Shown piece after piece: positions 3,090 through 59,600 of a DNA stretch of 64,000 bases; position 1 is the stretch's first letter, and each line of letters opens with the position of its first letter. A program made the position numbers and the translations under genes. The notes beneath the pieces are model-generated. The model had not been told where the DNA came from and did no database searches. It was given only the letters and a program-made list of their open reading frames with translations. Origin of the DNA: Ruditapes philippinarum (lineage: Eukaryota); contig NW_026859119.1 of NCBI RefSeq assembly GCF_026571515.1, positions 248,001-312,000 on the forward strand, read 5' to 3'.

Positions 3090-5590
3090 CTCTTGTTCCT
3101 GGGTCGGGTGGGGGCTGCGTTCATTGAACGCCGCCTTTCCTTGATGATCTTGTTTATCATATTTTTTTAAAATTACAATGCTGGAGCGAAAACAAAGTGG
3201 ATCATACAACTAGCAATTTATGAAACACAATGGTACATCTTTAAGATTGATTATTTCTCGTAGATTTATTTTTCAAATTAATTTATCTATAGTTACTGTA
3301 AATTACTGGATTAAGAATTGATTACCGCTCAAGCCGGTGCTAGGGGGCGTTAGCGATGTTGCATTTATACATTATCCCTCATGTACAGACTCAATCAAAC
3401 CGAGGCTGCAATTCTTATGTTATTTTGTTGTGATTAATGCTTCCGAGGGATCACTTTGTTTCCAGAATTTTGCACTTATTCATTATTCCTCATGTACAGA
3501 CTCAATCAAATATGAAAAACAAGATCAACAAGGAAAGGCGGCGTTCAATGAACGCAACCCCCATATGACCCAGCAACAAGAACCAATGGCAAGGAGCCCA
3601 GGCGGACCCCAAATATAAAAAGGACAGGGCAATTTTTTGCTGCAACCGTGTCTGCAAAAACCGTGTCTGCAATTCTTGTGTTATTTTGTTGTGATTGATG
3701 CTTCCGAGGGATCACTTTGTTTCCAGAATTTTGTTGAAAGGAGTGCAAACGGTAGTACCCTACAGTACCGTCAATCAAACCGAGCCTGCAACATTTTCAA
3801 TAATGTTGTGTTCCCCTTTGTGGGCCTATTATTATTTTCTTAATCAGTTACGAATTATTTATCATTTAATGATTAACCTGTCCGTGCTCTGTCTTTGCCC
3901 TGTCCTGTTTTTGTTTGGGGTCCGCCTGGGCTCCTTACCATTGGTTCTTGTTGCTGGGTCATATGGGGGTTGCATTCATTGAACACTACCTTTCCTTGTT
4001 GATCTTGTTTATCATATTTTGGATTCAACATTTTTTGAAAAAAAAAAATCTGGAAACAAAGTGATCCCTCGGAAGCATTTATCACAACAAGATTTCAAGA
4101 GAATTGCAGACTCGGTTTGATTGAGTCTGTACATGAGGGGATAATGAATATGTGCAACTCCCTCACGTCCCCTAGCACCGGCTTGAGCGGTACTTAATTC
4201 TCAACACTTAATAGTGCTGGCATCAATGATCCCGAAGGACCAGAAAAATATAACAACACTGAAGTGAAGTACCGGGCAACTTTTAACGGCTGCCACACGG
4301 CACTTGACACTTGTTGTTGTGAAATATGATAAGCAAGATCAACAAGGAAAGGCGGCGTTCAATGAACGCAACCCCCACTAAAGTACAAAATTCTGGAAAC
4401 AAAATGATCCCTCGGAATAAATCATTTTGCAGTGACAATTGCTATGTTTAGTCCTTCGGGATCATTGATTCCAAAAAATAACAAGAATAAAGATCAACAA
4501 GGCAAAGGCAACGTTCACAGGACGCCTCCCCCGGCTTTACCCCAGCTTCAACTTTAAAGTGTTGAGAATTGAGTACCGCTCAACCCGGTGCTAGGGGGCG
4601 TGAGGGATGTTGCACGTATTCATTAACCCTCATGTACATACTCAATCAAACCGAGTCTGCAATTCTCTTGTTATTTTGTTGTGATTAATGCTTCCGATGG
4701 ATCACTTTCTTTCCAGAATTTTGAACTGGCGCTTGTTGCTGGGTCGGATGGGGGCTGCGTTCATTGAATGCCGCCTTTCCTTGTCGATCTTGTTTATCAT
4801 ATTATATTTCACAACTGCAGGCGTCAAGTGCCATGTGGCAGCCGTAAAAAGTTGCCCCGAACTTCACTTCAGTGTTGTTATATTTTCTGGTCCTTCGGGA
4901 TCATTGATGCCAACACTTTATTGTCTGGTCCTTCGGGATCATTGTAGCCAACACTTTAAAGTGTTGAGAATTGAGTACCGCTCAAGCCGCTAGCCGGTGC
5001 TAGGGGCCGTGAGGGATGTTGCACGTATTCATTATCCCTCATGTACAGACTCAATCAAACCGAGTCTGCAATTCTTATGTTATTTTGTTGTGATAAATGC
5101 TTCCGAGGGATAACTTTGTTTCCAGAATTTCGACCTTGAGCAGGGTCCTTGTATAAATTAACTGTCACTGCAAACTAATTGAATTGATGAATACAGAATC
5201 CCTAAAGAAGCCCAACACGGCAAAATTGAAAATGTTGCAGGCTCGGTTTGATTGAGCCTGTTCATGAACGGTACTGGAAAGTGCAAGTTACCGTCCACGC
5301 CCCCTAGCACCGGCTTAAGCAGAATTCAACATTGAAACATGAAATAGCAAAATTTTGAATTTAGAAACATCCGCAGATGTGTTCATACGGCGGTATGTCA
5401 TATCATGTCCTGTTTAAATGTTGAATTCATAAGCCGGTGATAGGGGGCGTGGACGGTAATTTGCACTTGACAGTACCGTCCATGCACAGGCTCAATTAAA
5501 AAAAAAGAGAGAGAGAAAAAAAAAACAAGAATAAAGATCAACTTGGCAAAGGCAACGTTCACAGGACGCCGCCCCAGGACACACCCAAGT
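3090..5590. repeat. Scrambled mosaic of 3-4 sequence modules in both orientations
   Basis: Module ccgctcaagccggtgctaggggg...tttccagaattt at about 3325(+), 4049-4190(-), 4576(+), 4978(+). Module aagatcaacaaggaaaggcggcgttcaatgaacgc at about 3090(-), 3520(+), 3895-4019(-), 4334(+), 4733(-). Long inverted pairs at 3511-3632/3895-4019 and about 4207-4377/4750-4920. Confidence 0.85.
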
Positions 5591-7169
5591 GGACACGAGG
5601 GCGAAATGAGCGGTTCACGCAATGCGAAACAATATAAACAAAAACAGGCCCACAGGATTTATGGAATTGTTATGAAGTAGGTAGGGGGCAAAAAAACTCG
5701 CATATCTTGCAGCAATAACCTCCTTTACATATACTGTAATAGAGCCAATCAAACCTGGCCTCATACTTTAAACAGGATATCAATTTTTTGCAACATTTCG
5801 CTGTAGACAGTTTAATTTCTTTTTCCGGTAAGATTTATTGTTGTGAGATATTTTCTTTCCTAGAAGAAAAGGGGAGCAACTCTTGCAACAGAAGTTTAAA
5901 ATACGTCGCTTTTTCTTAATATACGGATCTAAAATCGACGCGTCGTATGTTAAACTTCTTTTCGAGGATTTTCTCAGATTATAATAATGAAGGTGATGAT
6001 AATAATAATAATGATATTACTTCTGGAATACTGATTTGCATCATTTATCCGAAAAGTAGTACATGTAATTACCGGTATCTGCTCGTTAAAGAGCATGATT
6101 TCGATAAGTTTACATGGGAGTTGATAACAATTAGTCGTCCTTTTACAACAGACAATCGGACAATAAAACACAAATTGACAAATTTTGTCATAAAGCTAAG
6201 ATTGTTTCTGAATAAAAAAACTCAAAATGCAATATCATGTTTGCAATGAAATGCAGGGAGAGAAAAGATATACAACCATGTAGGCAAACAAAGAGACAGC
6301 CGGTAAACGAAAGACTGACATAAATACAGTAAACGGAGGGACAATAGTTTATCCTTAGACAAACAGAAAACCTGATTACCGTTGTATCGAAACCCTATAT
6401 CTTGTGTCTGTCCTTTTAATAATGCAACAACTACGAAAATGCACCTGTTGATACTCTTCAAAAAGATCAACGTAGGGTATGAAAAGAATTTCTTATTAAT
6501 TCGGTGTACAGAATACTCGTGGAAAAGGCATAACAATCAATGCATACCAGTATATGACTGTCTAATACACACACAATAATGTATAATATATGTAGTCAGG
6601 ACACTAGACAACTTTTGGGGACAGGTACCCATACCCTCAGAAAGGGGAATTTTGCATCATTTTAACACAAAAAGGGGAATTTTGAGTCGTATATAAGTTA
6701 TTTAGATCTAGGGTATTACACTTACTTTTAAGCACTATTTCCTACCATTAGGCCTACTTTCAATAGCTAGTATATCTTTTACTATAGACCTAACCAAATA
6801 AAAGATATAACATGAAGTTGTTCTTAAAGTATCTTTATTCTTCATTGTTTTGAATTTCTTATTACACTCAGGACAACTGACTCAGACATAAATTTTTCTA
6901 GACTTGGAAGTGAAATGATTAATGGCCCTCTCAAGTTGATTGTCACTCAGTGAAGTTGCTCCTTCATGAACAATTCTCATAATGTTATCAAGTGTTTCCT
7001 GGCTCATTGATGATCTGAGAGGAGTGCAAATACTGTTCATCAAAGAAAACACCCTCTCAACACAGGCTGTTGATGTTGGAATCAAACTGGACAGTAGCAC
7101 AAAGTAAGACATTACAGGGAAGGTTTGCTGTAATATAGGCTCATCAGTCAACTTCTTCAGCAGAAACTG

Positions 7170-7182
7170 CACTAACAAAGTT
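7170..7182 (+). repeat. Left TIR of RAG-like transposon (CACTAACAAAGTT)
   Basis: Starts with the RSS-heptamer-like CAC, preceded by TSD AACTG; exact reverse complement of 17079-17091. Confidence 0.95.
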
Positions 7183-7199
7183 CTATGCTCCTGCGTTTA

Positions 7200-7255
7200 T
7201 GAATAAATTATGCAAATGAGCCAGGTTGAGCCGCCATGTTAGAATTTCGGTAAGC
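7200..7255 (+). promoter_or_regulatory. Putative RAG1L promoter and non-coding first exon next to the left TIR
   Basis: Octamer ATGCAAAT at 7210-7217, YY1-like CCGCCATGTT at 7231-7240, splice donor GTAAGC at 7250, acceptor ttattatttcag at 7782 just before the ATG exon. Confidence 0.4.
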
Positions 7256-8706
7256 GTGTTGGAAATCGATACCTGTTCGTTTTGAAAGCTCGTCCTAACT
7301 TACAGTTTCCTTGAATGTAGGAAAACTTGGTTTTGTTTGATTGCATATTGAATGATAGGTATTACAAAATAAATATAATGAAAATCGATCAATAAATAAT
7401 TGTATACGAGCGTTATAAAGTCAATTTAATTCGTCAGAACAATAAGGTTCTGTTGCAGGGGTATCGGTAAAAAGACTCCTTTTTTTCCCCGTTTTTGAAT
7501 TTATTTGAACACGGATACAATTATTCTCAAACAGGTTTATGAATATACTTTACGTTGCAACCGAGTTTACCGTGTGTCCATTCCTTATTTAAATTGTCTG
7601 AGAAGTTAAATCTGTTTGTTTACATGTAAATGTGTACCGTCATTTTGACCGACTGGAATAAAAACTACCATGACGGTGATAATACCGGATATGTAATGAA
7701 AATTACACCGTGTAGTGCAAAGTTTTGGACATTTCAATTTAGCACAGTAGAGCTTGTGACATATGTTATTTTATTATTTCAGAAGAAAACAAATATGAGT
7801 GAAAAACAAATATGAGTGATTCCCCTGTTTTCAAGAGAAAGAAGCAGGAAGGGGTAAAAGTCTAATTTTTTTCATAATTTTATGTCAGAAATAGTTTTTA
7901 AGTTTCAGAATGGTATCGTTCTAGAAAGTTTTATTTTTTTACTTTCATTGTAACGGATATTAAGCGATGTACTTGAAAATGCAGTGAATAATTATGATTT
8001 ACTCAAATCAATGAGGCAATTTAATACTGCAAGCTGGTCCTGGAGTGTCTTATAGTACTGATTTTAAAATCAACTTTACAAGTAAGTTCTGTATGACAAG
8101 ATGCCCCTTACGCACCCCCCCCCCCCCAAAAAAAAAAAAAAAATAAAAAAAAATAACCCTCAAAGATGAGGCTCTAATGGGGTGTTGAAATGTAAAAAAA
8201 TGCTATTCGATCTCTTAGAAGGTTTATAAGAATTTGATTATGTTGGCACAAATAATCAACTTTGTAAATTCTCTAACAACTAAAAATTTAGAAACTGGAA
8301 TTTTACAAAAATGAGGTACTTCACGGGACATAGTTATTTTCTTACATTATTATATTTTAAAGAAAGTTCAGAATTGTTATTGTCTCAACTCAATGTACAC
8401 AACTAAGTTCTTTATAAATATACATTGAAGGAAAACAAATAATTTGAAGATGAGGCCCCATTGGGATGTTGAATTTTAAGTTTATTTTCTCTCAGACAGA
8501 CAGACACACACTCCAGGGTCCTTTCATTTCCAAGAATTTGCTTGCTGGGTTTTTAAATTGGTTAAAGGGAGTGCTTTACCTTTTATTTGCTACACTTTTG
8601 TTAATAAAGCCCAGTCAGGAAACCTCAACTGTACAGCTTATATCTTGCTGCTTGTACACACTTGTATTCGGAATTGTAGTACTGTATTATATAATCGCCT
8701 AACTAC

Positions 8707-8912
8707 TACTTTCAGTGCCTCGGTAGTAAATTAATCCACTTATTAAAGATGTTGTAGCTGATTCACTTTCGGGTTTGGGGAGGGACGAACTCAGAAATTT
8801 TGATAAGAATGCCAAACAGTATATTTTTTGATCTCACGGTGAAAAAACCTTCGAATGATTAAAATCTATGATGTTTGTAAAGACGACCAAGTCCAAAGGC
8901 ACTGAGAGTGTT
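8707..8912. mobile_element. Small MITE-like insertion in the RAG1L intron
   Basis: Inverted ends actttcagtgcct (about 8708) and aggcactgagagt (about 8897-8910). Confidence 0.35.
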
Positions 8913-10770
8913 ACTATAATCACATTTACTATACTTGCTTTTGTGTAACTAGTAAATTAACATTAACTTTTAATACAAGGTGACGGACTCCGGTACATCA
9001 TTTTACTATTAAATGCACTGTTCAGATATCACTTATTCGAACTGATGTTATAACTTATTTCTAAATGTGACATCACCAATACGAATCTAGATATATCCCA
9101 TTCGAACAGGTGATAAATTGTATCCCTTTGAATGGCTTATAATACCTAATCATATTGATGATATCACACATAAGAATTAGCGTGATCATTTATTCAAATG
9201 GAACCACATATCTGTATAGATAATATACCCAGTACGATTACATGAGCTTAGCTTTTACAAATGTTGAAGTCATCTACTCGAAAATATCATTTATAGAGAC
9301 ATATGTATTATTTCACCCATTTTGAATTGGTGATATCCCGTATTTACATTGGTGATATAACAAAGGTGCATTTGGTAGTAAAAACAAGGCCCCATAATTG
9401 GCACGCTGTATATAATATATTCTTGCTTCCATTTTAATACACTTAACACAGTGTGCTCCTTTGTAATCATAGTGTCTCAACTTATAAAAATTGTGCTGCA
9501 GGTGAAAGGATTCATATTATCTATGCTTCTCTAATGTAATCTTGCATTATGAATGTCTAGTGTCATAGTTCAAATGATTTGAAAGGCTAAGTCTATCTGG
9601 GCAATTGAAGAAAAGATTAATGGCTATTATATAACAAGCCGATATTTGTTGTAAGTTGCTTTGTTTTATTTTCTAAGCCGAAATGTGTAGAGACACATGT
9701 AATGTTTTCTAGACTTAAACTGATCAGGTCATTTGAACTATTTAGTGCTTTGCTAGTTCTAGAGGTTATCCAAAAATTTATTTTTCATAGCTGGCTGTTT
9801 AACAAGACTCCCCCGAGCAAGAGTGTCTTCGTTCATCTCAAGATTTATTTGCCAGTAGCCCACCAGAGTCTGAGCCTCTTCATTCTTCCCAAGACTTTTT
9901 TGAATCAAGTTTAGAAGAGCCTTTGCCTGAACCCTCTGATCCTATGTGGCAAAACTATATAGATCCCAATAAGGGAGATTTTAATTACATAGAATCTCCA
10001 GTTCACTCGTCAACTAACACAGTCGTTCAAGATAACGAACTAGTTGAAAAGTGTAAACAGTTAGAAATTTGCAATGAAGATCTTCGCCGCGAAAATGAGA
10101 AACTTAAAACAGAAAATGTAAATCTTAAAACCGAAATAAAAAAAATTGGAGAAAAAATGCAATGCAGATTTGGTAGAGAAGAAAACTTAAAATTGAAAGA
10201 AAAGGTGGAAGAACTAACATTTATACTAAATTTGCAAAGTGATACACAAAGTTCTACACAATGAATGTACGTGAAGATAAAGATGAGATTCATCCAAAGT
10301 CACTCTGTTCGAGCTGTAGAATTAGATTTTACAAATTTAGGCAAATGGTGCAAAAAAAGAGAGAATTTTTCTTCCACCTTTCCAACAGTGTATAATTTTT
10401 TGTATGCACAGTGAAAAAATGTACTTTCTGTAAAAGTAAATCTAAAAGCAAACTTTTATCACGTTGCTCCCAAGATATTTTTTGCAGGTTCGTGCATTCT
10501 TGCAATGGTTTGACAACTGCTAATGTCTGTCCAGTATGTAGGGTGTTACATAACAGCGGAGGATGTTGTACCTTTGACAGGTCAACTGCTATTACTATAT
10601 GAAACCATGACAGTGACATGTAAATATACCGGCTGTTCCTGTATTTCAAACATAAACACATTTCAAAAACCACGAAGAAGTGTGTAGGTTTTGGTAAATA
10701 CCCAGCTCTTTTCCCCAGCTCTTCTAAAAGTGCGACTGCTGTTCCGAAAATACCCATTTATGACTGTTCT

Positions 10771-10974
10771 TTTTTTTGTTTGTTTGTTTTGGGTTTTAAC
10801 TGGTGGAGGAAGACCTCAGGTGCCCTTCCGTGCATTATTTCAGGCACGAACGGGCACCTGAGTAGAACCACCGACGTTCCGTAAGCTAGCTGGATAGCTT
10901 CCTCACATGAAAGAATCCAAAGTCCCTGTCGGGATTCGAACCCACAGCGGTGAAGGGCAAGTGGTTTGAAGTCA
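10771..10974 (-). mobile_element. 5'-truncated tRNA-derived SINE inserted in RAG1L
   Basis: 11-bp TSD ATGACTGTTCT at 10760-10770 and 10975-10985, B-box GGTTCGAATCC on the minus strand, (AAAC)n tail. Removal restores KIPIYDCSNKYLKQRRLKGL. Confidence 0.92.
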
Positions 10975-13865
10975 ATGACTGTTCTAATAAGTATTTAAAA
11001 CAGAGACGCCTTAAAGGTTTAAATGATTTGGTAACAACATTTTGTCAAACAAATAAAGAGGATAAAGGCGACGCACTGTTTTTCATGTTACAACAGCATT
11101 TGAAAGACAGTAATGACGTCCGATTTAATGACATAAATGATATATGTAAATCAACTGATTCGAAACTGACCCCAAGCCAGTGCCTTGCTTTGAGAGTCGA
11201 TACGCTTCAAAGTAAAACTCAATATAAAGCCCAATACAATTTCTTGAAGAAAAATGTTCGCAATCCTTTACAACCTCCAAGTGTTATCGACGATGTAGAA
11301 CTGTTATACACACCAAGTTCAACGCGTTATAGCATCGAAGGGTTCGATTTCACGGACAACTACTATCACACACCAGCAAAGGCAGTATATAAAACAGACT
11401 ACGCATGTAAATATACTTCATTTGAGCCACTTGATGTTTTGCAAGACTTTGATCGATTACTGCCAGAATTTGCATCGCCTAACATAAAAGGTGTTCGATG
11501 GTGCTACCCTGATGCGATAGCTGGTACTTTGAAAGAGCTTGAACCGAAAATTGTATCTGGTCTGAAGAAAAATAATATTGACCCAAACGATCCTAAAATT
11601 TTATTGATAACAAACATTAAAGATGGTGGTGATGGTCTCGGTGACGTGTCAATTCATAAGGAATTATCCGACCGGTTCTTGCCTGACAAAGCATTTAGAT
11701 TTTCTTTCTGTATTTTTAAAATTGAGGCTGCGGTTGGCGACAATGAACCAGTTGAAATTTTCCTAGAGGAAAAGCCAAATTCTGTTTAGAACTAATCGGC
11801 CTCTGTTAGAAGCAATATGCGACGAAAGCAATAGAGCTTCAAGCTTGGCGTGTCTTTTGCCGATTGAAAATGAAAGGTCCTTCATGAAAGATAAAATAAT
11901 GAGAGTACAACATACTAATGGATGGCGAAGACATTGTCTAAAATTTTTCAATAGTATGATTGACGAAAAGTTGGACAGGAAAGAGAGCGGTTTAGCAGAA
12001 AGTTGTTCAAGATACCTTTGCACACTTTGTGAAGCCACCACATTAAGCGCGGTTAAGGACCTTGGCACTTTCAAAATTACAAGAACGTACGATGAAACTA
12101 AAGAAATCGCGGAATATATGAGGGTAAATCCTGATAACCTTTCGCACGCGGCAATTGACAAGATTTCCAAGGAGTAAAAAAGGGCCCCTCTTTTAAAAGC
12201 TGAAGCGATTGAAAAGTGTTTAGATGCAACTCATGCTGACATAAACCTAGGGTCTTTTTCAAAAAGGTTTTGGTAAGGGAAGTTGCATGCATCACCCAGT
12301 GGGAAGCTACTGCGGACGTAAAGCCAATAATTAAAGACAGTGAGGTTAAATTTGATATGCATTTAAAAAAATACTATTGGCATAAACCCAGAGTTAATGA
12401 TGCCAGGTAATTATGCCAGGGTATTGTTTGATGAAAAAAATGAATCAAAAATACTTGCTTATATCACAGATGGAGAAAGAAGGAAACATTTGTCAAGCGT
12501 GCTGCAGAAATTTAGACTCATGAGGAAAGTGTACCGGGCTAAAGACCCAAAGAAGGAATGTCCTGGGGATGTATCCTCATACAAAGTTACAGCTATAGAA
12601 ATGGGCAGACTACTTCTGGCACATTTTGAATATGCTTCTTGGCCTAATTACCTACACAAAGTAATCGAACATGTTCAAGAAATAATTGAAAGCACAGATG
12701 GTCCAGGTACAGTAGGTGGTATAAGCAGCGAAGGGAATGAGTGTGGGAACAAGATTTTCAGACATATGCGGAAAAACATGGCAAGAAAGGGAAACACTCA
12801 AGGTGGTCTAAGGGACGTGTTGTGGTGTCACTGGCTTTACAGTAGTCCAGAACTTACAAGTCTTGCTTTAGTAACATTGAAACAGTCTAGATGTAGTTTG
12901 TGTTTGGAGGTTGGTCATAACAGACGTACTTGCGCGATGAACACAGTCTTTCCTGATGTTACTGTTCAAATTTGAGTGGCTATTTGTGAACTGCTATTAG
13001 TTGTCAAAAATATTAAAAGAGGTATCGAAAGTAATGTGTAAAATTTTAAGCATATTTTCATTAAAAATGACATTACCAATAACTGGAAACTGTGTACTTA
13101 GTTTAAATATAGGGGATATTGAAAAAGTAAGTAAAACATGTCTAGTACTCATTTTATTTAACTATGTAGCCATAGTAACCTTAATATTAACACTTGTGGT
13201 GGTTTGGTGTGGCTTGCATGAAAGCTAGCTAATATGCTTATATCCCAGGAGGAATAAGCAGACGTTTTTCTTTATCTCGTTTTTCTTATAATTATTCCAC
13301 TATATCATCAATATCATATAATGCATGTCTTGTTTCAGTAATATGTATTCGCTAAATATTTTGTGTAATCACTATAAAACATGTATGTACCCTTGTTCAG
13401 TTGGCTAATTTCTTACGAGATGATACGCGTGGTCTAGGTTGATATCTGTTATTCTGTTGAAATAAGCTGAAACAAATTGTAAAAACTACTTTTTGTGTCG
13501 CCTTTTCTGCGAAATTGCTGATAAATTCAGATGTTAAAAATAAGCAAAATATTTGGTTCATTCATTTACTGGTTTATCATAAATATACCATACTAAGTAG
13601 TTCAGCTTCGTTTATCAAAGTAAATGTTTTCAACCTAACAATAGCATAACGGTGGTGCAGATAGTATACAAGTATTAAAAAAGAAGTAAATGTTGTGTGC
13701 GCACTCAATTTATGTGCACATAATGCTGTAACATGTGCAAAAAAAATAATATTGCATCATGCATGCTACTTCTATATACCAGTAATTACTTATATGCATG
13801 TGCTACCGTATAATCACTGTATATATTAAATAAATTGTTATGGTTCATTTCATTTCTTTGTTGTC

Positions 13866-16281
13866 CTATTTCAATGTTTTCCTTTTTCTACCTTGACTTT
13901 TGCAAGTAGAGCATACATATTTCCCTTTAGGGACACCTTTTTCCAGGAGACCAACACAAAACTGGTGTAACCATCGTTTACATTTGCTTTCACACTGAAC
14001 CCATGCTATAGGTGAAATTTCTGGAGAGTCAGATATACAACATTCATCATTTAAGTCACATGGGCTAGGTCTCAATGGTTTGGTTGTATATGCAAATATT
14101 GTCTCCAGAACTCCTCCAACAACCATAATGCAGTCATCTGACAAAGTAAAACTTGAATTCCCAGCAGTACAGTACATAATATCTAACTCTGTACTCTCAA
14201 TACTCAACGACTGTAAGTCAATAGCATATAATTTGTTGCTGGCTGTTGGGGGATCCGTAATCTCTGCTTCCTTTTGAACAAACCCACCTGTGATATAGAG
14301 TATGTTATTAAATGAAACGACACTTTGATACGAAATAAATATGTCTTCTGGAATTGAAGCAGATATCTTATCTAGACTGTATCTACGCTCAGCTACACCA
14401 TGAAGTTTCAATATGACAAGTTCACTTAATGGAAGTCTTAGTCTTTCCGACGGTGAAGACTCTACCCCTTTGAATGACACACCTCCTGTTATGATCACAC
14501 ATCGTGTCCCTGAAATTGTAGCAATGTTGGCAGTATGGTAGGCTCTAGGCATTACATCCGGAATATCTCTGATTTTTGTCCAGCGGAGTGTTCTTGAATC
14601 AAACTCATAGAATGAACCGTCGTTGCAAACTTGAGAAAACGGACTGGCAAGACCAGGTTTATGTCGGTTGGGAAGAGATAATCCGCCATGCATCACTATA
14701 ACATTTTCACTCAACTGTGTAACGGTATGTCCAGTTCTGCCAACTGGTATATCTCCATTCTGTACTAATTTACTTAATGAAGTTTTTCCGGCAGGTTGAC
14801 AAATTGTACACTGATATTTGTTCCTAATAAAATCCAACTTGATAAGTTCATTGCTGGTTTCAAATGTGTCTGTATTTAATCCACCCATACAAAAACGGTG
14901 CGTGTGTCATACCATGCACTAACAGACTGTAAGCTTGGAAAATGGGCCCCCATTATGTTATCGAATCGCTGTATACTGCTGATATACGCATCATCAGGGT
15001 CATGGTTGAATGTCATATGAAATAAATCGTGTCCAAATTTCCATTCGGTTTCCTGAACTTTACGAGCACCACCAAAATATAGGAAAGTGGATTCACTGTC
15101 ATTAGACTTTAGTTTTATGCAACAGTGTCCTTCAGGGGGAAAGTAGTCATTATTTTGTAAATTTAGTTCGATTCTCTTTCTAATTGCTTTACCTTTTGTA
15201 GAAGATTTTGATTTAAATGGGAGAATCTAATTCCCCGGAAATAATTATTAACCTTTCAAATATAAAAAAGGCATCAAATTCACCTGAATATTTCAAAGAG
15301 AAGTTTCTAGCAATTAAGGAAGAACATGAAGATTTTATACATATTTATACGGACGGTTCAAAAGAAGGTTGCAAAGTAGGTGCGGCTGTGTTTGAAAATA
15401 ACTTTACATCTAGTATGAGGTTACCAGATAATGCATCAATTTTTACTGCTGAAGCAAAAGCTATCGATTTAGCATTGTCATACATAGCACAGCATACCCA
15501 CGATAAATTTGTGATATTTTCTGACTCGCTTTCTGTTTTAATATCCATTAAAAATAAAAAATCTGACAATATCATGGTAAAGAAACTTCTTTTGCGATTT
15601 CATGATATACTAAAAACAAAATATGTTAAATTATATTGGATTCCAAGCCATGTAGGAATACGAGGAAATGAAAAAGTAGATGCTTTAGTTAAACAATCAT
15701 TAAATTTTCAAAAAACTGACTTATTGTTACCTGCTTGTGATTTTAGACCGGCTATAAATAAACTCGTATCATCTGAATGGAAAGCAAATTGGGACAGTGC
15801 CGTTTTTAATAAACTTCACGATATAAACCCATCTCTTGATATGTCACCATCTCTATCTCTGTCAAACCGCCGTGATCAAACAGTTCTTCTTCGATGCCGA
15901 ATTGGACACACTAAAATTACCCACTCTTATCTTCTCACAAATGAAAATGCCCCTTTCTGTGTAGGTTGTAATGAAAATTTTACTGTCAAGCATTTTCTTC
16001 TTGAATGTCATGATTTTTCACAGGCCCGTAATAGATATTATTCTGTAAATTCACTCAAAGAACTTTTTAATACAATTCCATCAAAAAACATAATTGATTA
16101 TTTAAAAGAGATAAACTTGTATTCTAGGATCTAATGGGCTCATTTTTATTGTCATTTACAATGTTTTACATAATATTCTAAGCCTATTATAGCATTCGGC
16201 ACGATATGGCCAGTTATGTGTTGACGTGCCGTATAATCCAAACAAACAAACAAACCTCCAATCGGAATCTGCAAATGCCAT
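13866..16281 (-). pseudogene. RAG2L: RAG2-like protein (kelch propeller plus PHD finger), interrupted by a LINE and a 1-bp frameshift
   Basis: ATG at 16281 (MAFADSDWR) resumes at 15227 (ILPFK...DYFPPEGHCC...FLYFGGAR...VFVW), with a frameshift at about 14885 into GGLN. Kelch blades: GRTGHT..VMHGGL, PRAYHT..IITGGV, LYITGGF, MVVGG. PHD: PCDLNDEC...WVQCESKCKRWLHQFCVG...YVCSTC. Convergent with RAG1L. Confidence 0.92.
15228..16254 (+). mobile_element. 5'-truncated I-group (Nimb-like) LINE: RNase H domain, CCHC-like motif and 3' tail, inserted in RAG2L
   Basis: ORF 15217-16134 has YTDGSK, AEAKAI, FSDSLS, WIPSHVGIRGNEKVD and CVGC...TVKHFLLEC. The 3' UTR has a stem cggcacg/cgtgccg and an (AAAC)n tail. 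RAG2L codons rejoin across it. Confidence 0.92.
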
Positions 16282-16938
16282 GTTTCTCTAAAATTGTAAA
16301 AAGTTTACATTTATTAGATTATTTATTGTGACACAAGTTCCTTAATTCATACAAATTTATTTATTCTCAATTTCGAAATGATTCGTACAACTTTTATTAA
16401 TCGCTGTTAAGACTCGTTCCACATAGAATCAACCTCGAAAAAAGATAGGAGGCAACGTTTAATTATCGATATTGTTATGTCTTTCTTTAGAACACATGGC
16501 TATTTTTGCGATCAAACACATGTTAAAAATATTTCATGCACTTTCCGGGGTATGTTGACCCAAGTTATGTGGTTTTAACCAGTACTCCATGTATAATCAC
16601 CAAAGTTACAGGGAATTTTTGTACTACATCTAGATTAATTGGGCTTAGACTATTAAACAAACATATAATTTCAACTACTGCTGAAATGATCTCCAAATTT
16701 ATAATCCTGTTTATTGCGCATATATAGTCTGTTATGCAACTTCCCAGAAGGATATACTCGTATACGGAAAGTAACAATTTCTTTATCGCTTAACTACGTA
16801 TCTTTCATATAATTAAGACTAAAAGGAAATCAATCTTGATAGAAGATATACACGTTCTTAGGTCCCGAAATATTACCCCTGCAAATGGTGTGCATATTTC
16901 TACATACAAATTAATAATATCTTAAAATTAACACTTAC

Positions 16939-17078
16939 GTTGCTTGTCAGCAAAATTGAAACCGAAAGTAGCGGTTGTTCTAAAATTTAATCGAGTAAAA
17001 TGGGTGGGATTTAACCACCGCGCATGCCCTGTGCGAACGTATTGTTTACATCCGGTCGTAGCATAGGGTAAGAGTGCA
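16939..17078 (-). promoter_or_regulatory. Putative RAG2L promoter and non-coding first exon inside the right TIR
   Basis: Minus-strand donor GTAAGT at 16938 and acceptor tttacaattttag at 16288, 6 nt upstream of the RAG2L ATG. Confidence 0.45.
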
Positions 17079-17091
17079 AACTTTGTTAGTG
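17079..17091 (-). repeat. Right TIR of RAG-like transposon (AACTTTGTTAGTG on +)
   Basis: Exact reverse complement of 7170-7182, followed by TSD AACTG at 17092-17096. Confidence 0.95.
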
Positions 17092-20000
17092 AACTGTGGG
17101 TCTGATAAATCTGTTTCAGATGCCCTCTGCCTAAAAAGATATAGATTAAAACAGTTGGTCAGAGAGAAAGTTGCAGAATAGCTTTTTTTTAACTTGAAAT
17201 TCTATCAATATTAATGATAACATACAAAATATACCCCCATATTATATAAAAATTATACTAGAAATGTTATAAAACTAAAATGTTAATGCAAAAATTTCTG
17301 GATTCATCATTGTATTTAAACATAATAATTAATTTTATAATATTATCACTAGAAGCTTAAGATCTATATTAACATACTATATATGCAAAGACTTGTTCTC
17401 TAATCATAAAAAGGATATTTACACTGCTCATCATCTATGAGCCAGGAAACCAATGGCCATACAATTATTATGCATGATATGAATACAAATACACTCAGTA
17501 ACACTCACCTTGATAAGGGCCAGTGGCCATTTCACCTAAGTTCCTATGACTAGCAAAAAGTTCTAACATAAGAACTGATCAACATAAACTTCTGAAATAA
17601 CAAAAAAAGAATAAACAAAAATGCAACATTTCAATAGAAAATAAAAACTTACCAAACAAGAAAATGTGAAAATCCTTTGCTTCTGTATGTTTATTCAGAG
17701 TGAAAAGTATATAAAAGAACACTGTAGAAAATTAACTGGCTAACAATAAATAACACAAAATAACTATTTAAACTTTGATATTGCTTCAAATGAAACTGAC
17801 CAGACCACTTACTTCATTATAAACATCTGATGCTTAAAAGCACTGAACTCTCTTCTGATGATCTCTGCTGGAAATTCTGGCTGAGCAACAACATGATGTC
17901 CCATGAAAGTGTCCTGTTTCGCCTCACCATAGTGATCAGCAATGTGGCTAATAGAGGTCTATATCAAATGAAATTATGTGAAATAATTGTATTGCTTTGT
18001 GATTGAATAAATGGGTTCTAAACTCTATAAATAAAAGTTGAAAAAATTACTATTAGTATGAAAACTGAATATTCTTGATTATATTAAAATATATATTATT
18101 TGGAAAACAACAACTTTACAATTAAGTAAAACATGTTATCTATTTATTTATACCTGTCCATAGTCGCCCAATTCAAGGGGATTTGAAGGTACATGTCTCA
18201 TATCAAACACAGAGAAAGCACCTAAAGCTGGACTACAATGAAATGCATCTTCGAGCTCCTGTATCAAACTGTACACCATCGGCCTGGCAACTTCTTCTGC
18301 GAACTGTTGAATAGTGATTGGCCCTTCATCCCTGAAAAATCCAAAGATCATGCTTATGATGAAAAGACAAATATAACTTGTTCATAAACAGTTTAGTTTC
18401 ATTAAATTACAAATTACTTAGTTTTAATTCTGACAGTCACTTCAATTGTAATAAATAAAATCATGTCTAACAAGACTGTCTGAAATAATAACTATAAGTT
18501 TTTAATTTTTTGGTACAGTTATAAACCTTAAGTCTCTAAAGAAATTATGTTATATAATGAACTTTTTTACCTTAGCCTTCTTGCAAGTTCTCTCCTCTCA
18601 TCTATCAGATCCCATATCATTGGCAGTTTGGAGAAATAAAGTTCTTCATCATGCACACAATCACCAACTTGAGTTAATCTATTACTCAGATTTTCAAGTT
18701 CATCTATGAGGTTCTGAAGTTATAAACTTAAGGTTGATAATGTAACTGAAAATGTAAAGTCTATAAGAGAATGCATATCCATTTATATCTATTCAATTAA
18801 AAAAAATGTTTTAATGGAGTAATTGTCAAACATAACTTGATTCAATCGTAATTTGTAACTGTACATTTCTTTGTTGGCATTTAGTTATGTGATATGTATA
18901 TATGTACATCAATAGCCAAGTCAGAATGATAATTAAATTTGTGTGAAGATTTGACAGTAGTGCTTAACAAAGACAGGCATATTTTTGTTGAAATACTTAC
19001 TCTCATTTTCACGTGAAAAGTGAACATCACCTTGTAAGTAGTCACTGAATATGACAATGGGCTTCAGCATATCACATAGGGAAGCTGCTGCTGCTGCTAT
19101 TGTATGTTTGTTAAGTAGCATCTCCCTTAATCCGACTACTTCAGGGCTTCTTGATTAAGTCAATATGGAATCTATCGCATCAATTATGGGTTCATATCTA
19201 TCAAGGAGGCGGCTGCAAGCCCTTCCATGGGATAACCACCTTGTAGCTGCAGCTCTCAAAAACGTCAGCTTTGTCATGTTGTAGGCCTCCTGGACTTCCA
19301 TAAAGACCTGAAAATTTTATTTTTTGTAAAAATTCACTGATGGATCATGCAGGTATTGATTTAGTTAATAGATCTAAATGATTTCACATGAATACAATTG
19401 GCAGCTTGAATTTTTTAGAATTTAATCAATGTCATCATAATGACATTAACTTCCTTTTTTTTCATATTTCAAGTACAATATATAACATATTTTGCCTGAA
19501 AAAGTTTTTTTTTGTTTGAAATATCCGACAATTTATTATTATAATTTCATCTTGTATTCAAAACATGTCATTTAGTGACCAGTCACCTTAAATTATAATT
19601 GCATCTGATTTTACAATTTATTTTTTTCGGTTATTACACAAGCAAACAGTAGATTTAACATTCAAATTTAATTAATGGGTGAGCCTGATTGTTGGTAGGA
19701 CACTACTAAGTCTACTTACAGCAAATCTTTGGGCCGAAAATTTGAACAATTTCCAGATGGCAATCAGCACGGCATCTAGGTCTGAAAGAACTGGGTATTG
19801 CTTGACAAGATGACTTACACACAAGGCAAGTCTATGATTTCTGCAGTTAATGTAGAGTTGAAATGGGACCACATGTCTGAATCTGCGCTGTAATCCTGTG
19901 GATAAATTATAAAATAATATTCTAAAATACAGTATAAATACCAATGTCTTTATTTATTTAATTACTTTCATTACTGTAATAATGAATGTATTTACATTAA

Positions 20001-21672
20001 TGCCTTTATATTTTTATTAAAATAAAATAGTGTTATGATAAAAAATCTGATAGTTTAATGATGTCCTCTTACCTTTGTTGACCCCACTCATAACATTACA
20101 GCCATCAAAGCCTACAAAAATGGCTTTTTTGATATCGATTCCCTTGCCTTGAAGAAACCGTTCAATGGCTTCCATCAAACTTGCTGCATCAGTAGACACC
20201 ACTTGAATGATCCCAACAAAAACATCTGCCACTTGCTTTCCCTTTAGAAGTTTGATTATTACTGCAAATTGTTCTCGATTAGACTCATCGGTTGATTCGT
20301 CAGCCATTAGAGCATAGCATTTGGCATCACGGATTTGTTTAAGGATCTCATCTTCAAATGCAAATGCAATTGATTTGACAATGTCCTGGATAGAAGATGG
20401 AGAAGTGTAAGTCAACTTAGGATTTTCATTCACATACTGTTTTACCATTTCATTTTTTATATCAGAAGCCAAGAAGTTCTTGATAAAATCCTCAAGGTTG
20501 TCAGTGAGTGCCCATCTTTTCCTAAGCATGAAATGTGAAGTACGGAACAAGGTCTCCAAATATGTTTTGTTCAATGCCTTTTTACTTTCAACTTGTTTTG
20601 CCAATAATGGAAAAATCTTCTGTGTACCTTTAATTGATTTGGAAAGGTAGCTTTCTGAAGCCTTTAAGTGCTTCTCAGACTGGTCATGAGTTTTTAGACG
20701 TCTTGCTGGATGAGTGCCTAACTTAACTCCACGTGAAATATAAGCAGTTGTCTCATCAGCCAATGAACTACTATACATGAATTCACAGTACTTGCAGCAA
20801 TAACCTTCTTTGGATGCGCTGTAGTAAAGCCATTTGAAAGTCTTTTCATATTTATTGGTATCAAACAGTCGATTGTCAGGCACCATTACACATGCTTTTT
20901 TACTTGTACATATATCGGACCCATTGTCTGAATCATCAGCACTAGAAGTAGAATCATGAGAATGGGAGTCAACTAATACTGCTTTACGTTTTGGTGATTC
21001 TTTTTTAGAGACTGTAGTTGATGTTGTGATTTCAGACAAAGATAATGCATGCTGCTTAAATAAATTGTCAATTTTCTTACACTTTTCTGATGTTTTTGAC
21101 GTTATTCTTTTTGGCTTGCAGCCACGGCTGCAAGCCCATTTGTTTTGGAAAACTTGTTCCGGTTAGGTGGTTTCCTGCTTACATTTGTTAGTGCATGATT
21201 GAACGAGAAACCAACTGCAATCGTGCCAATCGCAACTTTTTGGCCCTTTCCGTCACTCTTCGGTTTAATGATTATAGCCGATGTAGTTCCGATTGCAATC
21301 GTGACAATTCGGGCGATTCCGTCATACTGCGGAATCAGACGAAGTAATATTACGGAAATCTAAGCTATTTTAGTTACTTCGGTAATCCCAGTTTGTTTAT
21401 ATAAATAGGATTTCTATTTTTACTTGATTTATCGGTTTAAACCGTAATAAATTATAAACGAAATTGTTACGTTTCAATTCTTTTTCAAGACGCAAAAGTT
21501 AGTTTCTTTTATAATTGTTTTTGTCTGTATTAGTTTTGTATATTAATTAACATAAATACCTTATACAATAGAGGATGGTTACGTCTCCAAAGGGTGGTCT
21601 TGCTTACCAAATCACAGAGAATATTAGTGCATGATCGAGTTATATTTAGATCTAATGAACGCAGTGAGGTAA

Positions 21673-56641: not shown

Positions 56642-59600
56642 ATGGTTTCAAAGGTAAGTCGCACTTATTATATATACACTATATACACTTACATTTTTTT
56701 TTATTTTAATTAATTCAATAAAAGGATATTGACGAAATGTATGCAAATAATCATTGTTTCTATACACATAAGAGTACTTATGAAAATATATTTAAAATTT
56801 GGAATAGTAGTTTCTAATTACATGTATAATTAAACATTTATCGTAAAGGTATCACGGACACAAACTTTACCTCGGCAAGTGTTTTCGCTGAGATGATTTA
56901 GAGTTTTTTCATTAATGAATCCTTAGAATAGGTTGCCAGTTATTTAATATATAAAATCCAAGAAATGAACACCCGTTACGTACTTCCGTATTGGTATATA
57001 ATAAAAGTACTGTTGAACTGACCCGAAACAGCAATTAATGATGAAATGATTCCTTTTGGATCACTTGCATTATATATTACAAGTCACAACCGTTTCTTTT
57101 AATAATAAGTGCGATAAAGATTAATGATCTAAATCAATCAAATGTCATATAATTTTACTTCAATAATTAATTTATTTTTTTTTTCAGAAAATGATTTCGA
57201 ACCGCACAATTTTCTCTTGGGTGTTACTGATCAGTTTAATATGCTGCATCCTAATAGCTGATTTGGAATGTAAGCGTCATTCAAAAGCTGAGAAAAAATT
57301 CTCAGAGGAAGATAGCAGTTCATTTTCTAACAACAAAAATGGCGATCAACTTTGGTCAGATGAAAATAACCAAGAACGAGTGAACGAAAAGCATCCGAAG
57401 CCTAAAAAAGAAAGTTCAGAAAGCATATATTCGACAATATCAGAGCAAAGGAACATCAAAGAAACAGATTCAAGTTCTGAAAATACCAATAGTAATTATC
57501 TTCAAGATAAAGATACTGATAATGACAAAAGCGCTGAAACGACTTTAAGAGAAGATTCGAGCGTCAGAAGAAATCAATTCAAACCAAAGTATTTGGAAGA
57601 CGAAGAAGATTACAAAACCTTTGAAAGAAAATCTTATTCGTCAAATCCAGAAAATAAAAATGATATTGGCACTGAGAGCAGAAGAACACTAACTGAGGAA
57701 GATTTCACCAGCCAAGAAAGTGAAGCAACGTCAAGAAACAAAGAACGAGAGACTAATGAATTGAAAGTAAGCGAGCAGCAAGAAAAACAGGGAAAAGATA
57801 GAACGGAGCCGTCTGATTCAAAATCAAGCTATCATGAAAACGATGTAGACAAAACTGAAAGGAGTATGGGTAAGACCGGGAGTGAAAACGAATACTATGA
57901 AAATAGTAGAGGTAAGACCGGGAGAGAAAACGAATACAATGAAAATAGCAGAGATAAGACCGGGAGTGAAAACGAATACAATGAAAATAGTAGAGGTAAG
58001 ACCGGGAGTGAAAACGAATACAATGAAAATGGTAGAGAAAAGACCGGGAGTGAAAACGAATACAATGAAAATAGTAGAGAAAAGACCGGGAGTGAAAACG
58101 AATACAATGAAAATAGTAGAGAAAAGACCGGGAGTGAAAACGAATACAATGGAAATAGTAGAGAAAAGACGGGGAGTGAAAACAAATACAATGAAAATAG
58201 CAGAGATAAGACCGGGAGTGAAAACGAATACAATGAAAAGAGCAGTATTAGTATGTCAAAACATTCCAATGGGGATCTTAACTATCAAGGTGACAGGAGT
58301 TCGGAACAGAAACATACATTGACAGAAGACAGCAGTGGAGCATCAGGAGAAAGCATTCAAAAGACGACCGAAGCCAAACCAATAATATTAAAATATCAGA
58401 ACCCATTGTCTTAACGCCAAATGATAATGTTGATTATGATAATAACGTTTTGTACTCAGAAAACAGCGTTTTTAGCACAACCGTAAGTCCTACAAAATAC
58501 CAGACCTCTTTATCAAATATGTTATCCACAGCAACAACAAACAAACCAAGCATATCATCGACAGGAGTTATAAATGCAAGACAAGATAAGAAAGAGGAAA
58601 CTGTTGACATATTAAATACTGCACCGGGAATAATAATAAAACAGCCATTTACTGGTCGTAAAAAGTGCATTGAAAGAACGCCTCCTTGTTGTGTTCCCGG
58701 TCAGGTTGATATAAATCTTGGTGAGTGTCATGTTGGCTTTTCTTCTATGCAATGTTTCTTTTTTTTGTTAAGTAGTTCACACAAACGTAAATTTACATAA
58801 ATAAATGTTTGAAGGTCTGTGGTGAGGAATAGGCATGATTTTCAGTTTTAAATAGATTTCGATAAATACAATAAAAATGTGTTTTACGATGTTCTTTGAT
58901 GATGAAAAAAACATGATTTAGAAAGTCGTTTTTTTCTCAACGCGATCGGTAATTTCCACCGCCATTTTAACTGATGACGTTTCAATATCCCTACTTAATT
59001 TTCTTAACCCTCATGTCAGTTATGCTTATGTGTAAATGCATCAAAATATCTATTGTATTGTACAATTGTTTTTTCTTAACGAGTATTATGTAAAAAGAAT
59101 AAAGATTTTCTTTTGATATTTAAGTGCTTTACGCGAACTCGACCATAAATGCAGCTGATTTTTAAACTCAAATGGCCATTCAATTATTCAACTGGATTGT
59201 AAATTAACAAGGAAAGAGACAAATAAACAGACAAAAACATCCTCAAGGCTTAAATTTCTGTTACAAACCATGCAATTTACGGCTTTATAGACAGATTTTG
59301 ATGTATATCAAATTTTACTAGACGTCTATTTTCTGATTTGGTATTCTTTCTAAGCTAAGTATTGTCTTCATCACTTTACCCTTTGATTATTATCTACACC
59401 ATAATCTCTTTATAGTAATTCATCAAAGATCTATTTGTGCAATGTTTTGAACAATTCTGTCACATGATCTTTTGTGTGTGTATTTAGGTACAATTAATTA
59501 TAAAGCACGGGTAAATGGCGAGTTGGATGGTGTTAGTGCAACAGTATCTACAAAGCCACAGAGAGCATACAAACGATGTAGCAATTCCGCTGTAATTAAG

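What the first reader, a model, noticed from the sequence alone, without database searches (positions are those of the whole stretch)
7165..17096. Complete RAG1L-RAG2L transposon with CAC-initiated TIRs and 5-bp TSD in an invertebrate (probably bivalve) genome
Seen in sequence: AACTG|CACTAACAAAGTT ... AACTTTGTTAGTG|AACTG brackets a RAG1-like gene (+) and a kelch-PHD RAG2-like gene (-) arranged tail to tail. Established: this is the architecture of amphioxus ProtoRAG and of the proposed ancestor of the V(D)J recombinase; RAG and Transib transposition makes 5-bp TSDs, and RSS heptamers begin CAC. RAGL elements have been reported in some protostomes, including oysters, so the class is known. Inference: this may be an undescribed family or host. 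Unmutated TIRs and TSD suggest a relatively recent insertion, so intact sister copies may exist.
Basis: partly seen in the sequence, partly recalled or inferred. Interest (0 to 1): 0.97.

Follow-up and report, generated by a model that had tools for sequence, protein, structure and literature searches.

The report
Dead RAG-like transposon copy in Manila clam
This is a real but broken copy of a RAG-like (ProtoRAG-type) jumping gene, a relative of the ancestor of the vertebrate antibody-gene recombinase, in the Manila clam genome, where the same family also left two sister copies and well over a hundred short derivative copies.

Summary
At 7165-17096 a 9,922-bp element is bounded by perfect 13-bp inverted ends (CACTAACAAAGTT) and a 5-bp duplication (AACTG). 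It carries a RAG1-like gene (+) and a kelch-PHD RAG2-like gene (-), tail to tail.

The host is Ruditapes philippinarum, a venerid clam. Two sister copies lie at other loci with their own 5-bp duplications (CAATA, CGCCT). At least 137 candidate short (~740-bp) internal-deletion derivatives exist; 14 of 17 examined have distinct perfect 5-bp duplications.

RAG1L matches amphioxus BbRAG1L (E 3e-165) far better than vertebrate RAG1 (about 1e-66). RAG2L matches BbRAG2L (E 1.7e-31). The ends fit the published protostome RAGL consensus at 15 of 17 positions.

The window copy is not functional. It has a nested SINE, a nested LINE fragment, two deletions in the RAG1L N-terminus and several frameshifts. 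None of the three RAG1L copies is intact. Copy B keeps an open RAG2L, which RefSeq calls "uncharacterized".

It is a new member of a known kind (RAGL-B, known from pteriomorph bivalves since 2020), here in a heterodont clam with an unusually large derivative family.

The parts
7165..7169 (.). left target-site duplication AACTG
   Evidence: identical 5-mer at 17092-17096
7170..7182 (+). left terminal inverted repeat CACTAACAAAGTT (heptamer CACTAAC plus an A-rich TR2-like AAAGTT)
   Evidence: It fits the protostome RAGL consensus CACTWMCAAACKTYKBB (PMC7204232) at 15 of 17 positions, counted over 7170-7186
7170..7739 (+). left arm, kept in the ~740-bp non-autonomous derivatives
   Evidence: derivative positions 1-568 = window 7170-7739, 96.7%; 118 candidates, all starting at base 1 of the element
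9803..10264 (+). open ~153-aa acidic/coiled-coil frame just upstream of the RAG1L zinc-finger region; open in all three copies; its relation to RAG1L (N-terminal extension or separate ORF) is unresolved
10225..10770 (+). remnant of the RAG1L N-terminal non-core region (zinc fingers, second half of the RING). Relative to copies B and C, 120-193 bp are missing at 10270 and 287 bp at 10447-10459
   Evidence: In copy B the same region hits RAG1_imp_bd PF12560 and RING families
10771..10974 (-). nested SINE-like insertion (antisense, (CAAA)n-type tail, about 10-bp duplication ATGACTGTTC) that splits RAG1L inside the codons for ...PIYDCS...
   Evidence: Absent from copies B and C. Very high word depth in all four runs. 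ARAGORN finds no intact tRNA
10975..12975 (+). RAG1L core (NBD to CTD) plus the C-terminal CCHC zinc knuckle. It is broken by 1-bp indels at 11785, 12170/12176, 12254 and 12365, with an in-frame stop at 12175-12177
   Evidence: DDE residues, ZnC2 and ZnH2 motifs are readable in the pieces
13866..15227 (-). RAG2L: six-bladed kelch propeller plus C-terminal PHD finger; a 1-bp deletion at 14883 shifts the frame
15228..16254 (+). nested 5'-truncated non-LTR retrotransposon 3' end (RNase H domain, (CAAA)n tail) inserted after about codon 9 of RAG2L
   Evidence: Absent from copies B and C and from contigs of run X1
16256..16281 (-). first codons of RAG2L (MAFADSDW...), cut off from the rest by the LINE fragment
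   Evidence: matches the start of XP_060562647.1
16922..17091 (+). right arm, kept in the non-autonomous derivatives
17079..17091 (-). right terminal inverted repeat (reverse complement CACTAACAAAGTT)
17092..17096 (.). right target-site duplication AACTG

Best explanation
Window 7170-17091 is one inactivated copy of a RAGL-B (ProtoRAG-type) cut-and-paste DNA transposon family of the Manila clam, Ruditapes philippinarum. By homology with amphioxus BbRAGL (inferred, not shown here), the intact element would work as follows. A RAG1L-RAG2L heterotetramer binds the two CAC-initiated ends. It cuts at the CAC border by nick-hairpin chemistry, using the DDE RNase-H-fold site of RAG1L. It then inserts the excised element with a 5-bp stagger, which gives the 5-bp duplication. 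Shown here: the family moved repeatedly. There are three gene-bearing copies and at least 137 candidate short internal-deletion derivatives at different loci, each with its own 5-bp duplication. The derivatives must have been moved in trans. This particular copy landed in the last exon of a DUF4371/hAT-type gene and then decayed. It acquired a SINE inside RAG1L and a LINE 3' fragment inside RAG2L, lost about 400 bp of the RAG1L N-terminal coding region, and carries several 1-bp frameshifts. It cannot encode the transposase. Because both ends are intact, it could at most be moved passively.
For: Ends and duplication. Three copies have unrelated flanks and the duplications AACTG, CAATA and CGCCT. 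Of 17 short copies, 14 have perfect, distinct 5-bp duplications. The derivative equals window 7170-7739 plus 16922-17091. There are 137 candidates; the 40 scored are all full length at 94-98% identity. RAG1L: Pfam RAG1; 6b40_A BbRAG1L E 3e-165 (554 bits) against vertebrate RAG1 at about 227 bits; no Transib chain at E <= 0.001. In the alignment the DDE residues, the ZnC2 CxxC, the ZnH2 HxxxxH and the transposase-type V and M at mouse E649 and R848 are all present. RAG2L: 6b40_M BbRAG2L E 1.7e-31 against E about 0.9 for generic kelch proteins. The AlphaFold model is an all-beta kelch-type propeller, and mouse RAG2 chains are among the fold matches. In the tree the protein sits with Mercenaria (support 100) and next to a Pinctada RAG1L (98). 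The ends match the published protostome consensus and 5-bp duplication rule. Lesions. Host: RAG2L of copy B is 100% identical to XP_060562647.1 of R. philippinarum, on a contig of the same length as C11980.
Against: No biochemical activity was tested; the mechanism is inferred from homology. About 15 of about 18 private 1-bp indels of this copy are extra bases in homopolymer runs. That pattern could partly reflect assembly error, so the small frameshifts are less certain than the large lesions. Contigs of independent runs lack these indels, but they follow the majority path over three near-identical copies. They therefore neither confirm nor refute the window's version. The fold search alone does not separate RAG2L from other kelch propellers.
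Confidence: 0.92

Rival explanations
1. The family is still active. An intact autonomous copy exists in this species but is unassembled or segregating, and the window's small frameshifts are assembly errors.
For: Every lesion is private to one copy, so the common ancestor of the copies was intact. Copies A and B are 98.4-99.5% identical. The short derivatives average 96.8% pairwise identity. Copy B keeps an open 464-codon RAG2L frame that RefSeq annotates as a gene. An RNA-seq library holds contigs over RAG2L of a copy without the LINE. RAG1L-core differences between lineage C and lineages A/B give pN/pS of about 0.2, on small counts. Most 1-bp indels of the window copy are homopolymer insertions.
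Against: A six-frame search of the 1.41-Gb assembly found only three RAG1L loci of this family and about six more distant ones, none open over its whole length. The window copy has large lesions that are not sequencing errors: a SINE with its own duplication, a LINE fragment, and 287-bp and 120-193-bp deletions. Copy B has a 7-bp deletion in the core, and copy C has lost RAG2L. No RNA contig on RAG1L was seen in the one library on record as RNA-seq.
Confidence: 0.2
2. It is a stand-alone Transib-type transposon that happens to lie next to an unrelated kelch-PHD host gene.
For: Transib also has CAC ends and 5-bp duplications. Pfam assigns the second protein only to generic kelch and PHD families, not to PF03089 RAG2. 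Foldseek ranks generic kelch proteins above RAG2.
Against: The kelch-PHD gene lies inside the inverted ends in copies A and B, with a remnant in C. It matches BbRAG2L at E 1.7e-31 against about 0.9 for other kelch proteins. Its relatives include proteins of Mercenaria, Mactra and Ptychodera. RAG1L scores 554 bits to BbRAG1L, and no Transib chain appears at E <= 0.001.
Confidence: 0.02
3. It is a domesticated RAG1L/RAG2L host gene pair, or the extra copies are an assembly or haplotig duplication rather than mobile copies.
For: Protostome genomes hold many RAG1L-RAG2L pairs without detectable ends. The assembly is fragmented, with 15,874 contigs.
Against: Homology between the copies stops exactly at the ends, and flanks and duplications differ. 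The unique part of the left flank (6894-7169) has no second copy in the assembly. More than 100 short derivatives share the ends. The genes are pseudogenised.
Confidence: 0.02

Closest known systems
Bivalve RAGL-B transposons of Pinctada imbricata and Crassostrea virginica (Martin et al. 2020, Mob DNA 11:17, PMC7204232)
   Same: The layout is TSD-TIR-RAG1L-RAG2L-TIR-TSD with convergent genes. The ends start CAC, carry AAA at positions 8-10, and fit the consensus CACTWMCAAACKTYKBB at 15 of 17 positions. Duplications are 5 bp. RAG1L has N-terminal zinc fingers, a RING, the core and a C-terminal zinc knuckle; RAG2L has a PHD finger. The nearest named non-venerid RAG1L is from Pinctada, at 64% identity, and is sister in the tree.
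   Different: The host is a heterodont (venerid) clam, whereas the 2020 survey reported bivalve RAGL only in Pteriomorphia and had no genome assembly for this species. Position 11 of the end is G, not C. The paper reports only 'a small number' of non-autonomous elements; here at least 137 candidates of one ~740-bp derivative exist. No intact RAG1L is present in this assembly.
Amphioxus ProtoRAG (BbeRAGL-B; Huang et al. 2016; structure PDB 6B40)
   Same: It is the best solved-structure match for both proteins. The catalytic and zinc-binding residues are the same, as are the transposase-type V and M at mouse RAG1 E649 and R848. It also has CAC ends and a 5-bp duplication.
   Different: BbeRAG2L lacks a PHD finger, while this RAG2L has one. 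The host phylum differs. This copy is inactive.
Predicted RAG1-like and RAG2L-like proteins of Mercenaria mercenaria (XP_045174389.2, XP_045210185.2)
   Same: They are the closest named relatives: 82% (RAG1L core) and 75% (RAG2L) identity. Both hosts are venerid clams, which is consistent with vertical descent of the family.
   Different: They exist only as automatic annotation.
Vertebrate RAG1/RAG2 and RAGL-A (Ptychodera flava; Martin et al. 2023, PMC10629977)
   Same: The RAG1 core is homologous (about 227 bits to vertebrate RAG1). RAG2 is a kelch propeller with a PHD finger.
   Different: There is no acidic hinge between the kelch domain and the PHD finger (read). RAG1L has V and M where RAG1 has E649 and R848. 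No significant asymmetric-spacer or nonamer organisation of the ends was found. It is a mobile element, not a domesticated locus.

Membership tests
RAGL (ProtoRAG-type) transposon, family B | RAG1-like transposase with the RAG1 core fold and sequence | tested here: met
   Pfam PF12940 hits on three window pieces. The 544-aa open core of copy C matches 6b40_A at E 3e-165.
RAGL (ProtoRAG-type) transposon, family B | DDE catalytic triad and the ZnC2/ZnH2 zinc site | tested here: met
   The alignment to BbRAG1L and zebrafish RAG1 shows the motifs DGLGD, IDEK, GNECGNK, CTLC and HKVIEH conserved. The same motifs are readable in the window's broken pieces.
RAGL (ProtoRAG-type) transposon, family B | RAG2-like six-bladed kelch partner gene, convergent with RAG1L, inside the same pair of ends | tested here: met
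   6b40_M matches at E 1.7e-31. The all-beta kelch-type propeller model has pLDDT 75. The orientation and the position inside the ends hold in copies A and B. The Pfam RAG2 family PF03089 itself was not hit.
RAGL (ProtoRAG-type) transposon, family B | Terminal inverted repeats that begin 5'-CAC and carry an A-rich TR2 | tested here: met
   The 13-bp ends are perfect. Each end fits the published protostome consensus at 15 of 17 positions.
RAGL (ProtoRAG-type) transposon, family B | 5-bp target-site duplication | tested here: met
   All 3 long copies and 14 of 17 short copies have one. One more case is a dimer with a matching outer duplication.
RAGL (ProtoRAG-type) transposon, family B | Family B rather than family A or vertebrate RAG: no RAG2 acidic hinge, a C-terminal zinc knuckle on RAG1L, and transposase-type residues at mouse E649 and R848 | tested here: met
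   The kelch-PHD linker is short and not acidic. The CCHC knuckle is at the end of 12397-12975. V and M sit at the two positions. The bit score to BbRAG1L is more than twice that to RAG1. No named RAGL-A sequence was in the tree.
RAGL (ProtoRAG-type) transposon, family B | Autonomy: both reading frames intact in this copy | tested here: not met
   The copy has a SINE at 10771-10974, a LINE fragment at 15228-16254, deletions at 10270 and 10447-10459, and 1-bp indels at 11785, 12254, 12365 and 14883. This does not affect family membership; it makes the copy a dead member.
RAGL (ProtoRAG-type) transposon, family B | End cleavage and transposition by the encoded proteins | not testable with these tools
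   This needs biochemical or cell-based assays.
Transib | Single-gene element with a Transib transposase and no RAG2L | tested here: not met
   RAG2L lies inside the ends. No Transib chain appears among the solved-structure matches at E <= 0.001.

The most novel reading that the evidence does not exclude
An intact autonomous copy of this RAGL-B family still segregates in Manila clam populations and is still moving the more than 130 short derivatives. If so, a farmed and experimentally accessible protostome would carry a currently active RAG-like transposon, together with a large natural record of its integration sites.
Probability: 0.2. Interest if true: 0.75.

Novelty: new member of a known kind. 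Interest (0 to 1): 0.45.

Why it matters
RAG-like transposons are the living relatives of the element that gave rise to V(D)J recombination. Among bivalves, bounded copies with ends and duplications were so far reported only in pteriomorphs (oysters and pearl oysters).

This element extends bounded RAGL-B transposons to heterodont (venerid) clams. The closest relatives are in Mercenaria, which fits vertical descent in bivalves.

It also supplies an unusually large set of independent integration events: at least 137 candidate derivative copies, all from one simple internal deletion. These can be mined for target-site preference and for the minimal end sequences needed for mobilisation.

Practically, it shows that RefSeq's "uncharacterized protein LOC132722215" of R. 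philippinarum is a RAG2L. It does not change the current picture of RAG evolution.

Tried and rejected
1. Asymmetric ends. The two ends share a CTATGCT motif 12 bp further in on the right, as another first-reader note also says. A local alignment of the subterminal 107 bp scores no better than shuffles (p about 0.57), so I reject this as evidence for a 12/23-like spacer.

2. Paralogous empty site. Only 6650-6893 of the left flank is repeated (an unrelated repeat); 6894-7169 is unique. No empty allele or paralogue was found.

3. Independent-run contigs as proof of an intact copy. They lack each copy's private lesions, but that is what a majority path through three near-identical copies would give. 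I reject them as proof.

4. Fold search for RAG2L. It confirms a kelch propeller but ranks generic kelch proteins above RAG2, so it does not discriminate.

5. ARAGORN on the nested SINE found no tRNA.

8. Paper searches for RAGL, RAG1 or Transib together with Ruditapes, Mercenaria or clam found nothing relevant. The held supplements of the 2022 survey do not name Ruditapes or Mercenaria.

All protein searches used natural open frames by reference.
Full report
**Observation.** The sequence reads AACTG|CACTAACAAAGTT at 7165-7182 and AACTTTGTTAGTG|AACTG at 17079-17096. With up to one mismatch, the 13-mer occurs only at these two places in the window, once on each strand; 0.24 matches are expected by chance. 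Between the ends, three + strand pieces (10950-11789, 11845-12177, 12397-12975) hit Pfam RAG1 at consecutive parts of the profile. The - strand ORF 13866-14888 is kelch plus PHD. The two genes are convergent and about 890 bp apart.

**It is a transposon, shown by other copies.** A search of the window's own 1.41-Gb assembly found two more copies that carry RAG1L.
- Copy B lies on contig C11980 (9,018 bp).
- Copy C lies on contig C11460 (10,414 bp).
- In both, homology to the window begins exactly at 7170 and ends exactly at 17091.
- The flanks are unrelated, and each copy has its own 5-bp duplication: AACTG, CAATA and CGCCT.

The 431-bp left end and the right end each have more than 110 candidate matches. 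Most belong to elements of about 740-750 bp that equal window 7170-7739 joined to 16922-17091, a simple internal deletion. Of 17 such copies examined, 14 have perfect and mutually different 5-bp duplications. A search with one whole derivative gave 137 candidates; the 40 that were scored are all full length at 94-98% identity. Mean pairwise identity among the 17 is 96.8%.

**Identity of the proteins.** The 544-aa open RAG1L core of copy C gives these results:
- It matches amphioxus BbRAG1L (6b40_A) at E 3e-165 (554 bits).
- It matches vertebrate RAG1 chains at about 227 bits.
- No Transib chain appears at E <= 0.001.

The alignment shows the two aspartates and the glutamate of the active site, the CxxC and HxxxxH zinc ligands, and V and M at the positions of mouse E649 and R848. 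That is the transposase-type state also seen in BbRAG1L. The numbering follows my own knowledge of mouse RAG1.

Copy B's N-terminal region hits the RAG1 importin-binding region and RING families. The window's last RAG1L piece ends in a CCHC zinc knuckle.

The open RAG2L frame of copy B (464 codons) matches BbRAG2L (6b40_M) at E 1.7e-31, while generic kelch proteins score E about 0.9. An AlphaFold model (pLDDT 75) is an all-beta kelch-type propeller followed by a small PHD-type module. Foldseek finds kelch propellers, including mouse RAG2 chains, but cannot tell them apart. The linker between the kelch domain and the PHD finger is short and not acidic.

**Host and relatives.** RAG2L of copy B is 100% identical to XP_060562647.1, "uncharacterized protein LOC132722215" of Ruditapes philippinarum. 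That protein sits on a contig of 156,493 bp, which is the length of C11980. Public runs that hold the sequence include "mollusc metagenome" RNA libraries and a marine sediment metagenome. The closest named proteins are from the venerid clam Mercenaria mercenaria (RAG1L 82%, RAG2L 75%), followed by Pinctada imbricata (64%). A quick maximum-likelihood tree puts the clam RAG1L with Mercenaria (support 100). That pair is sister to one Pinctada RAG1L (98), inside a bivalve-rich group and apart from the echinoderm and amphioxus RAG1L sequences. The careful tree search did not finish, and no Transib or vertebrate outgroup was included.

**State of the window copy.** Relative to copies B and C, the window copy has these lesions:
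- A 204-bp SINE-like insertion at 10771-10974. It is antisense, has a (CAAA)n-type tail and its own ~10-bp duplication ATGACTGTTC, and lies inside the RAG1L codons for PIYDCS.
- A 1,027-bp 3' fragment of a non-LTR retrotransposon at 15228-16254. It has an RNase H domain and a (CAAA)n tail, and it separates the first ~9 codons of RAG2L (16256-16281) from the rest.
- Deletions of 120-193 bp at 10270 and 287 bp at 10447-10459. These remove zinc-finger sequence and half of the RING.
- 1-bp indels at 11785, 12170/12176, 12254 and 12365 in RAG1L, and at 14883 in RAG2L.

Copy B has an open RAG2L, but its RAG1L is broken by a 7-bp deletion and further frameshifts. Copy C has an open RAG1L core, but it has frameshifts upstream, a 435-bp insertion near the 3' end, and RAG2L largely replaced. 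A six-frame protein search found about six more RAG1L-like loci at 45-57% identity. None of the RAG1L loci found is open over its whole length.

**Caveats on the small lesions.** About 15 of the roughly 18 private 1-bp indels of the window copy are extra bases in homopolymer runs. This could partly be assembly error. Contigs of four public runs lack these indels, and also lack the SINE and LINE junctions. However, such contigs follow the majority path across near-identical copies. They show that each lesion is private to one copy, and hence that the ancestor was intact. They do not show that an intact copy exists today. One RNA-seq library has contigs only over RAG2L, from a copy without the LINE. 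This fits transcription of copy B's annotated gene, although DNA carry-over cannot be excluded.

**Age and selection.**
- Copies A and B are 98.4-99.5% identical by region.
- Copies A and C are about 96% identical in non-coding parts but 98.6% in the RAG1L core.
- Core differences between C and A/B give pN/pS of about 0.2, on 9-17 substitutions. This is weak evidence for selection on the transposase while the lineages diverged.
- Between A and B, RAG2L has 1 synonymous and 6 non-synonymous changes, which looks neutral after insertion.

**Comparison with what is known.** Martin et al. 2020 (PMC7204232) described RAGL transposons with ends and 5-bp duplications in C. virginica, P. imbricata and a nemertean. 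They gave the end consensus CACTWMCAAACKTYKBB, noted PHD fingers on all invertebrate RAG2L except that of amphioxus, and reported only "a small number" of non-autonomous elements. Both ends here fit that consensus at 15 of 17 positions.

Their survey listed R. philippinarum with transcriptome data only and no genome project, and it reported bivalve RAGL only in Pteriomorphia. Paper searches found no report of RAGL in Ruditapes, Mercenaria or clams. Repbase could not be checked.

The element is therefore a new member of a known kind. What is new is the host lineage and the size of the derivative family.

**Rejected ideas.** The CTATGCT motif shared by the two ends at a 12-bp offset is not significant. 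The readings as Transib plus an unrelated kelch gene, as a domesticated gene pair, or as an assembly duplicate are contradicted.

**Limits.** As a result, ends of related species and a larger target-site sample could not be examined. I built no repaired, joined or consensus sequence.

Noticed in passing
window 6882-7178 (-), 17097-17200 and 20017-21039 (-): The element sits in the last exon of a hAT-type gene. A hAT dimerisation-domain frame starts at the left junction, and a DUF4371 ORF lies 3 kb upstream on the same strand. When the element and one duplication copy are removed in silico, the frame runs on for 35 more codons into the right flank.
   Followed up: partly
L018 (G000:C10559:204322-205832): Two short derivative copies lie head to tail, as TGCTA|copy|CAACG|copy|TGCTA. 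The outer 5-mers match and 5 bp separate the inner ends. This suggests a dimer, perhaps formed by unequal exchange at a duplication, that later moved as one unit.
   Followed up: partly
window 10771-10974 and 15228-16254: The nested SINE-like element and the LINE 3' fragment both end in a (CAAA)n-type tail, as expected for a SINE and its partner LINE. The SINE has very high word depth in all four public runs that were laid.
   Followed up: no
window 9803-10264 (+); copy B L039:6-473:-: A ~153-156-aa acidic/coiled-coil frame just upstream of the RAG1L zinc fingers is open in all three copies, although the rest of RAG1L has decayed. It has no Pfam family above threshold. It may be an N-terminal extension joined by splicing, or a separate ORF.
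   Followed up: no
G000 contigs C4313, C12925, C15024, C8870 (two loci), C13947 (loci L046-L058): There are further RAG1L-like loci at 45-57% protein identity to this family, all with stop codons inside the matches. The clam genome therefore holds several older, fossil RAGL lineages.
   Followed up: no
18 insertion sites (window, copies B and C, L015-L038): The 5-bp duplications are 43% GC against 33% for the window. They show a possible bias: purine at position 2 (17 of 18), T at position 4 (11 of 18) and purine at position 5 (15 of 18). Two unrelated sites share AACTG and two share TGCTA. The sample is too small to be sure.
   Followed up: partly
window 5182-5401; C11460 30043-32595: A ~220-bp repeat left of the element in the window is also present as several tandem-like copies inside copy C, where RAG2L has been replaced.
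   Followed up: no
window 57191-58414 (+): A 407-aa ORF has a signal-peptide-like start and a tandem repeat of about 13 aa (…TGSENEYNENSR…). It has no Pfam match.
   Followed up: no
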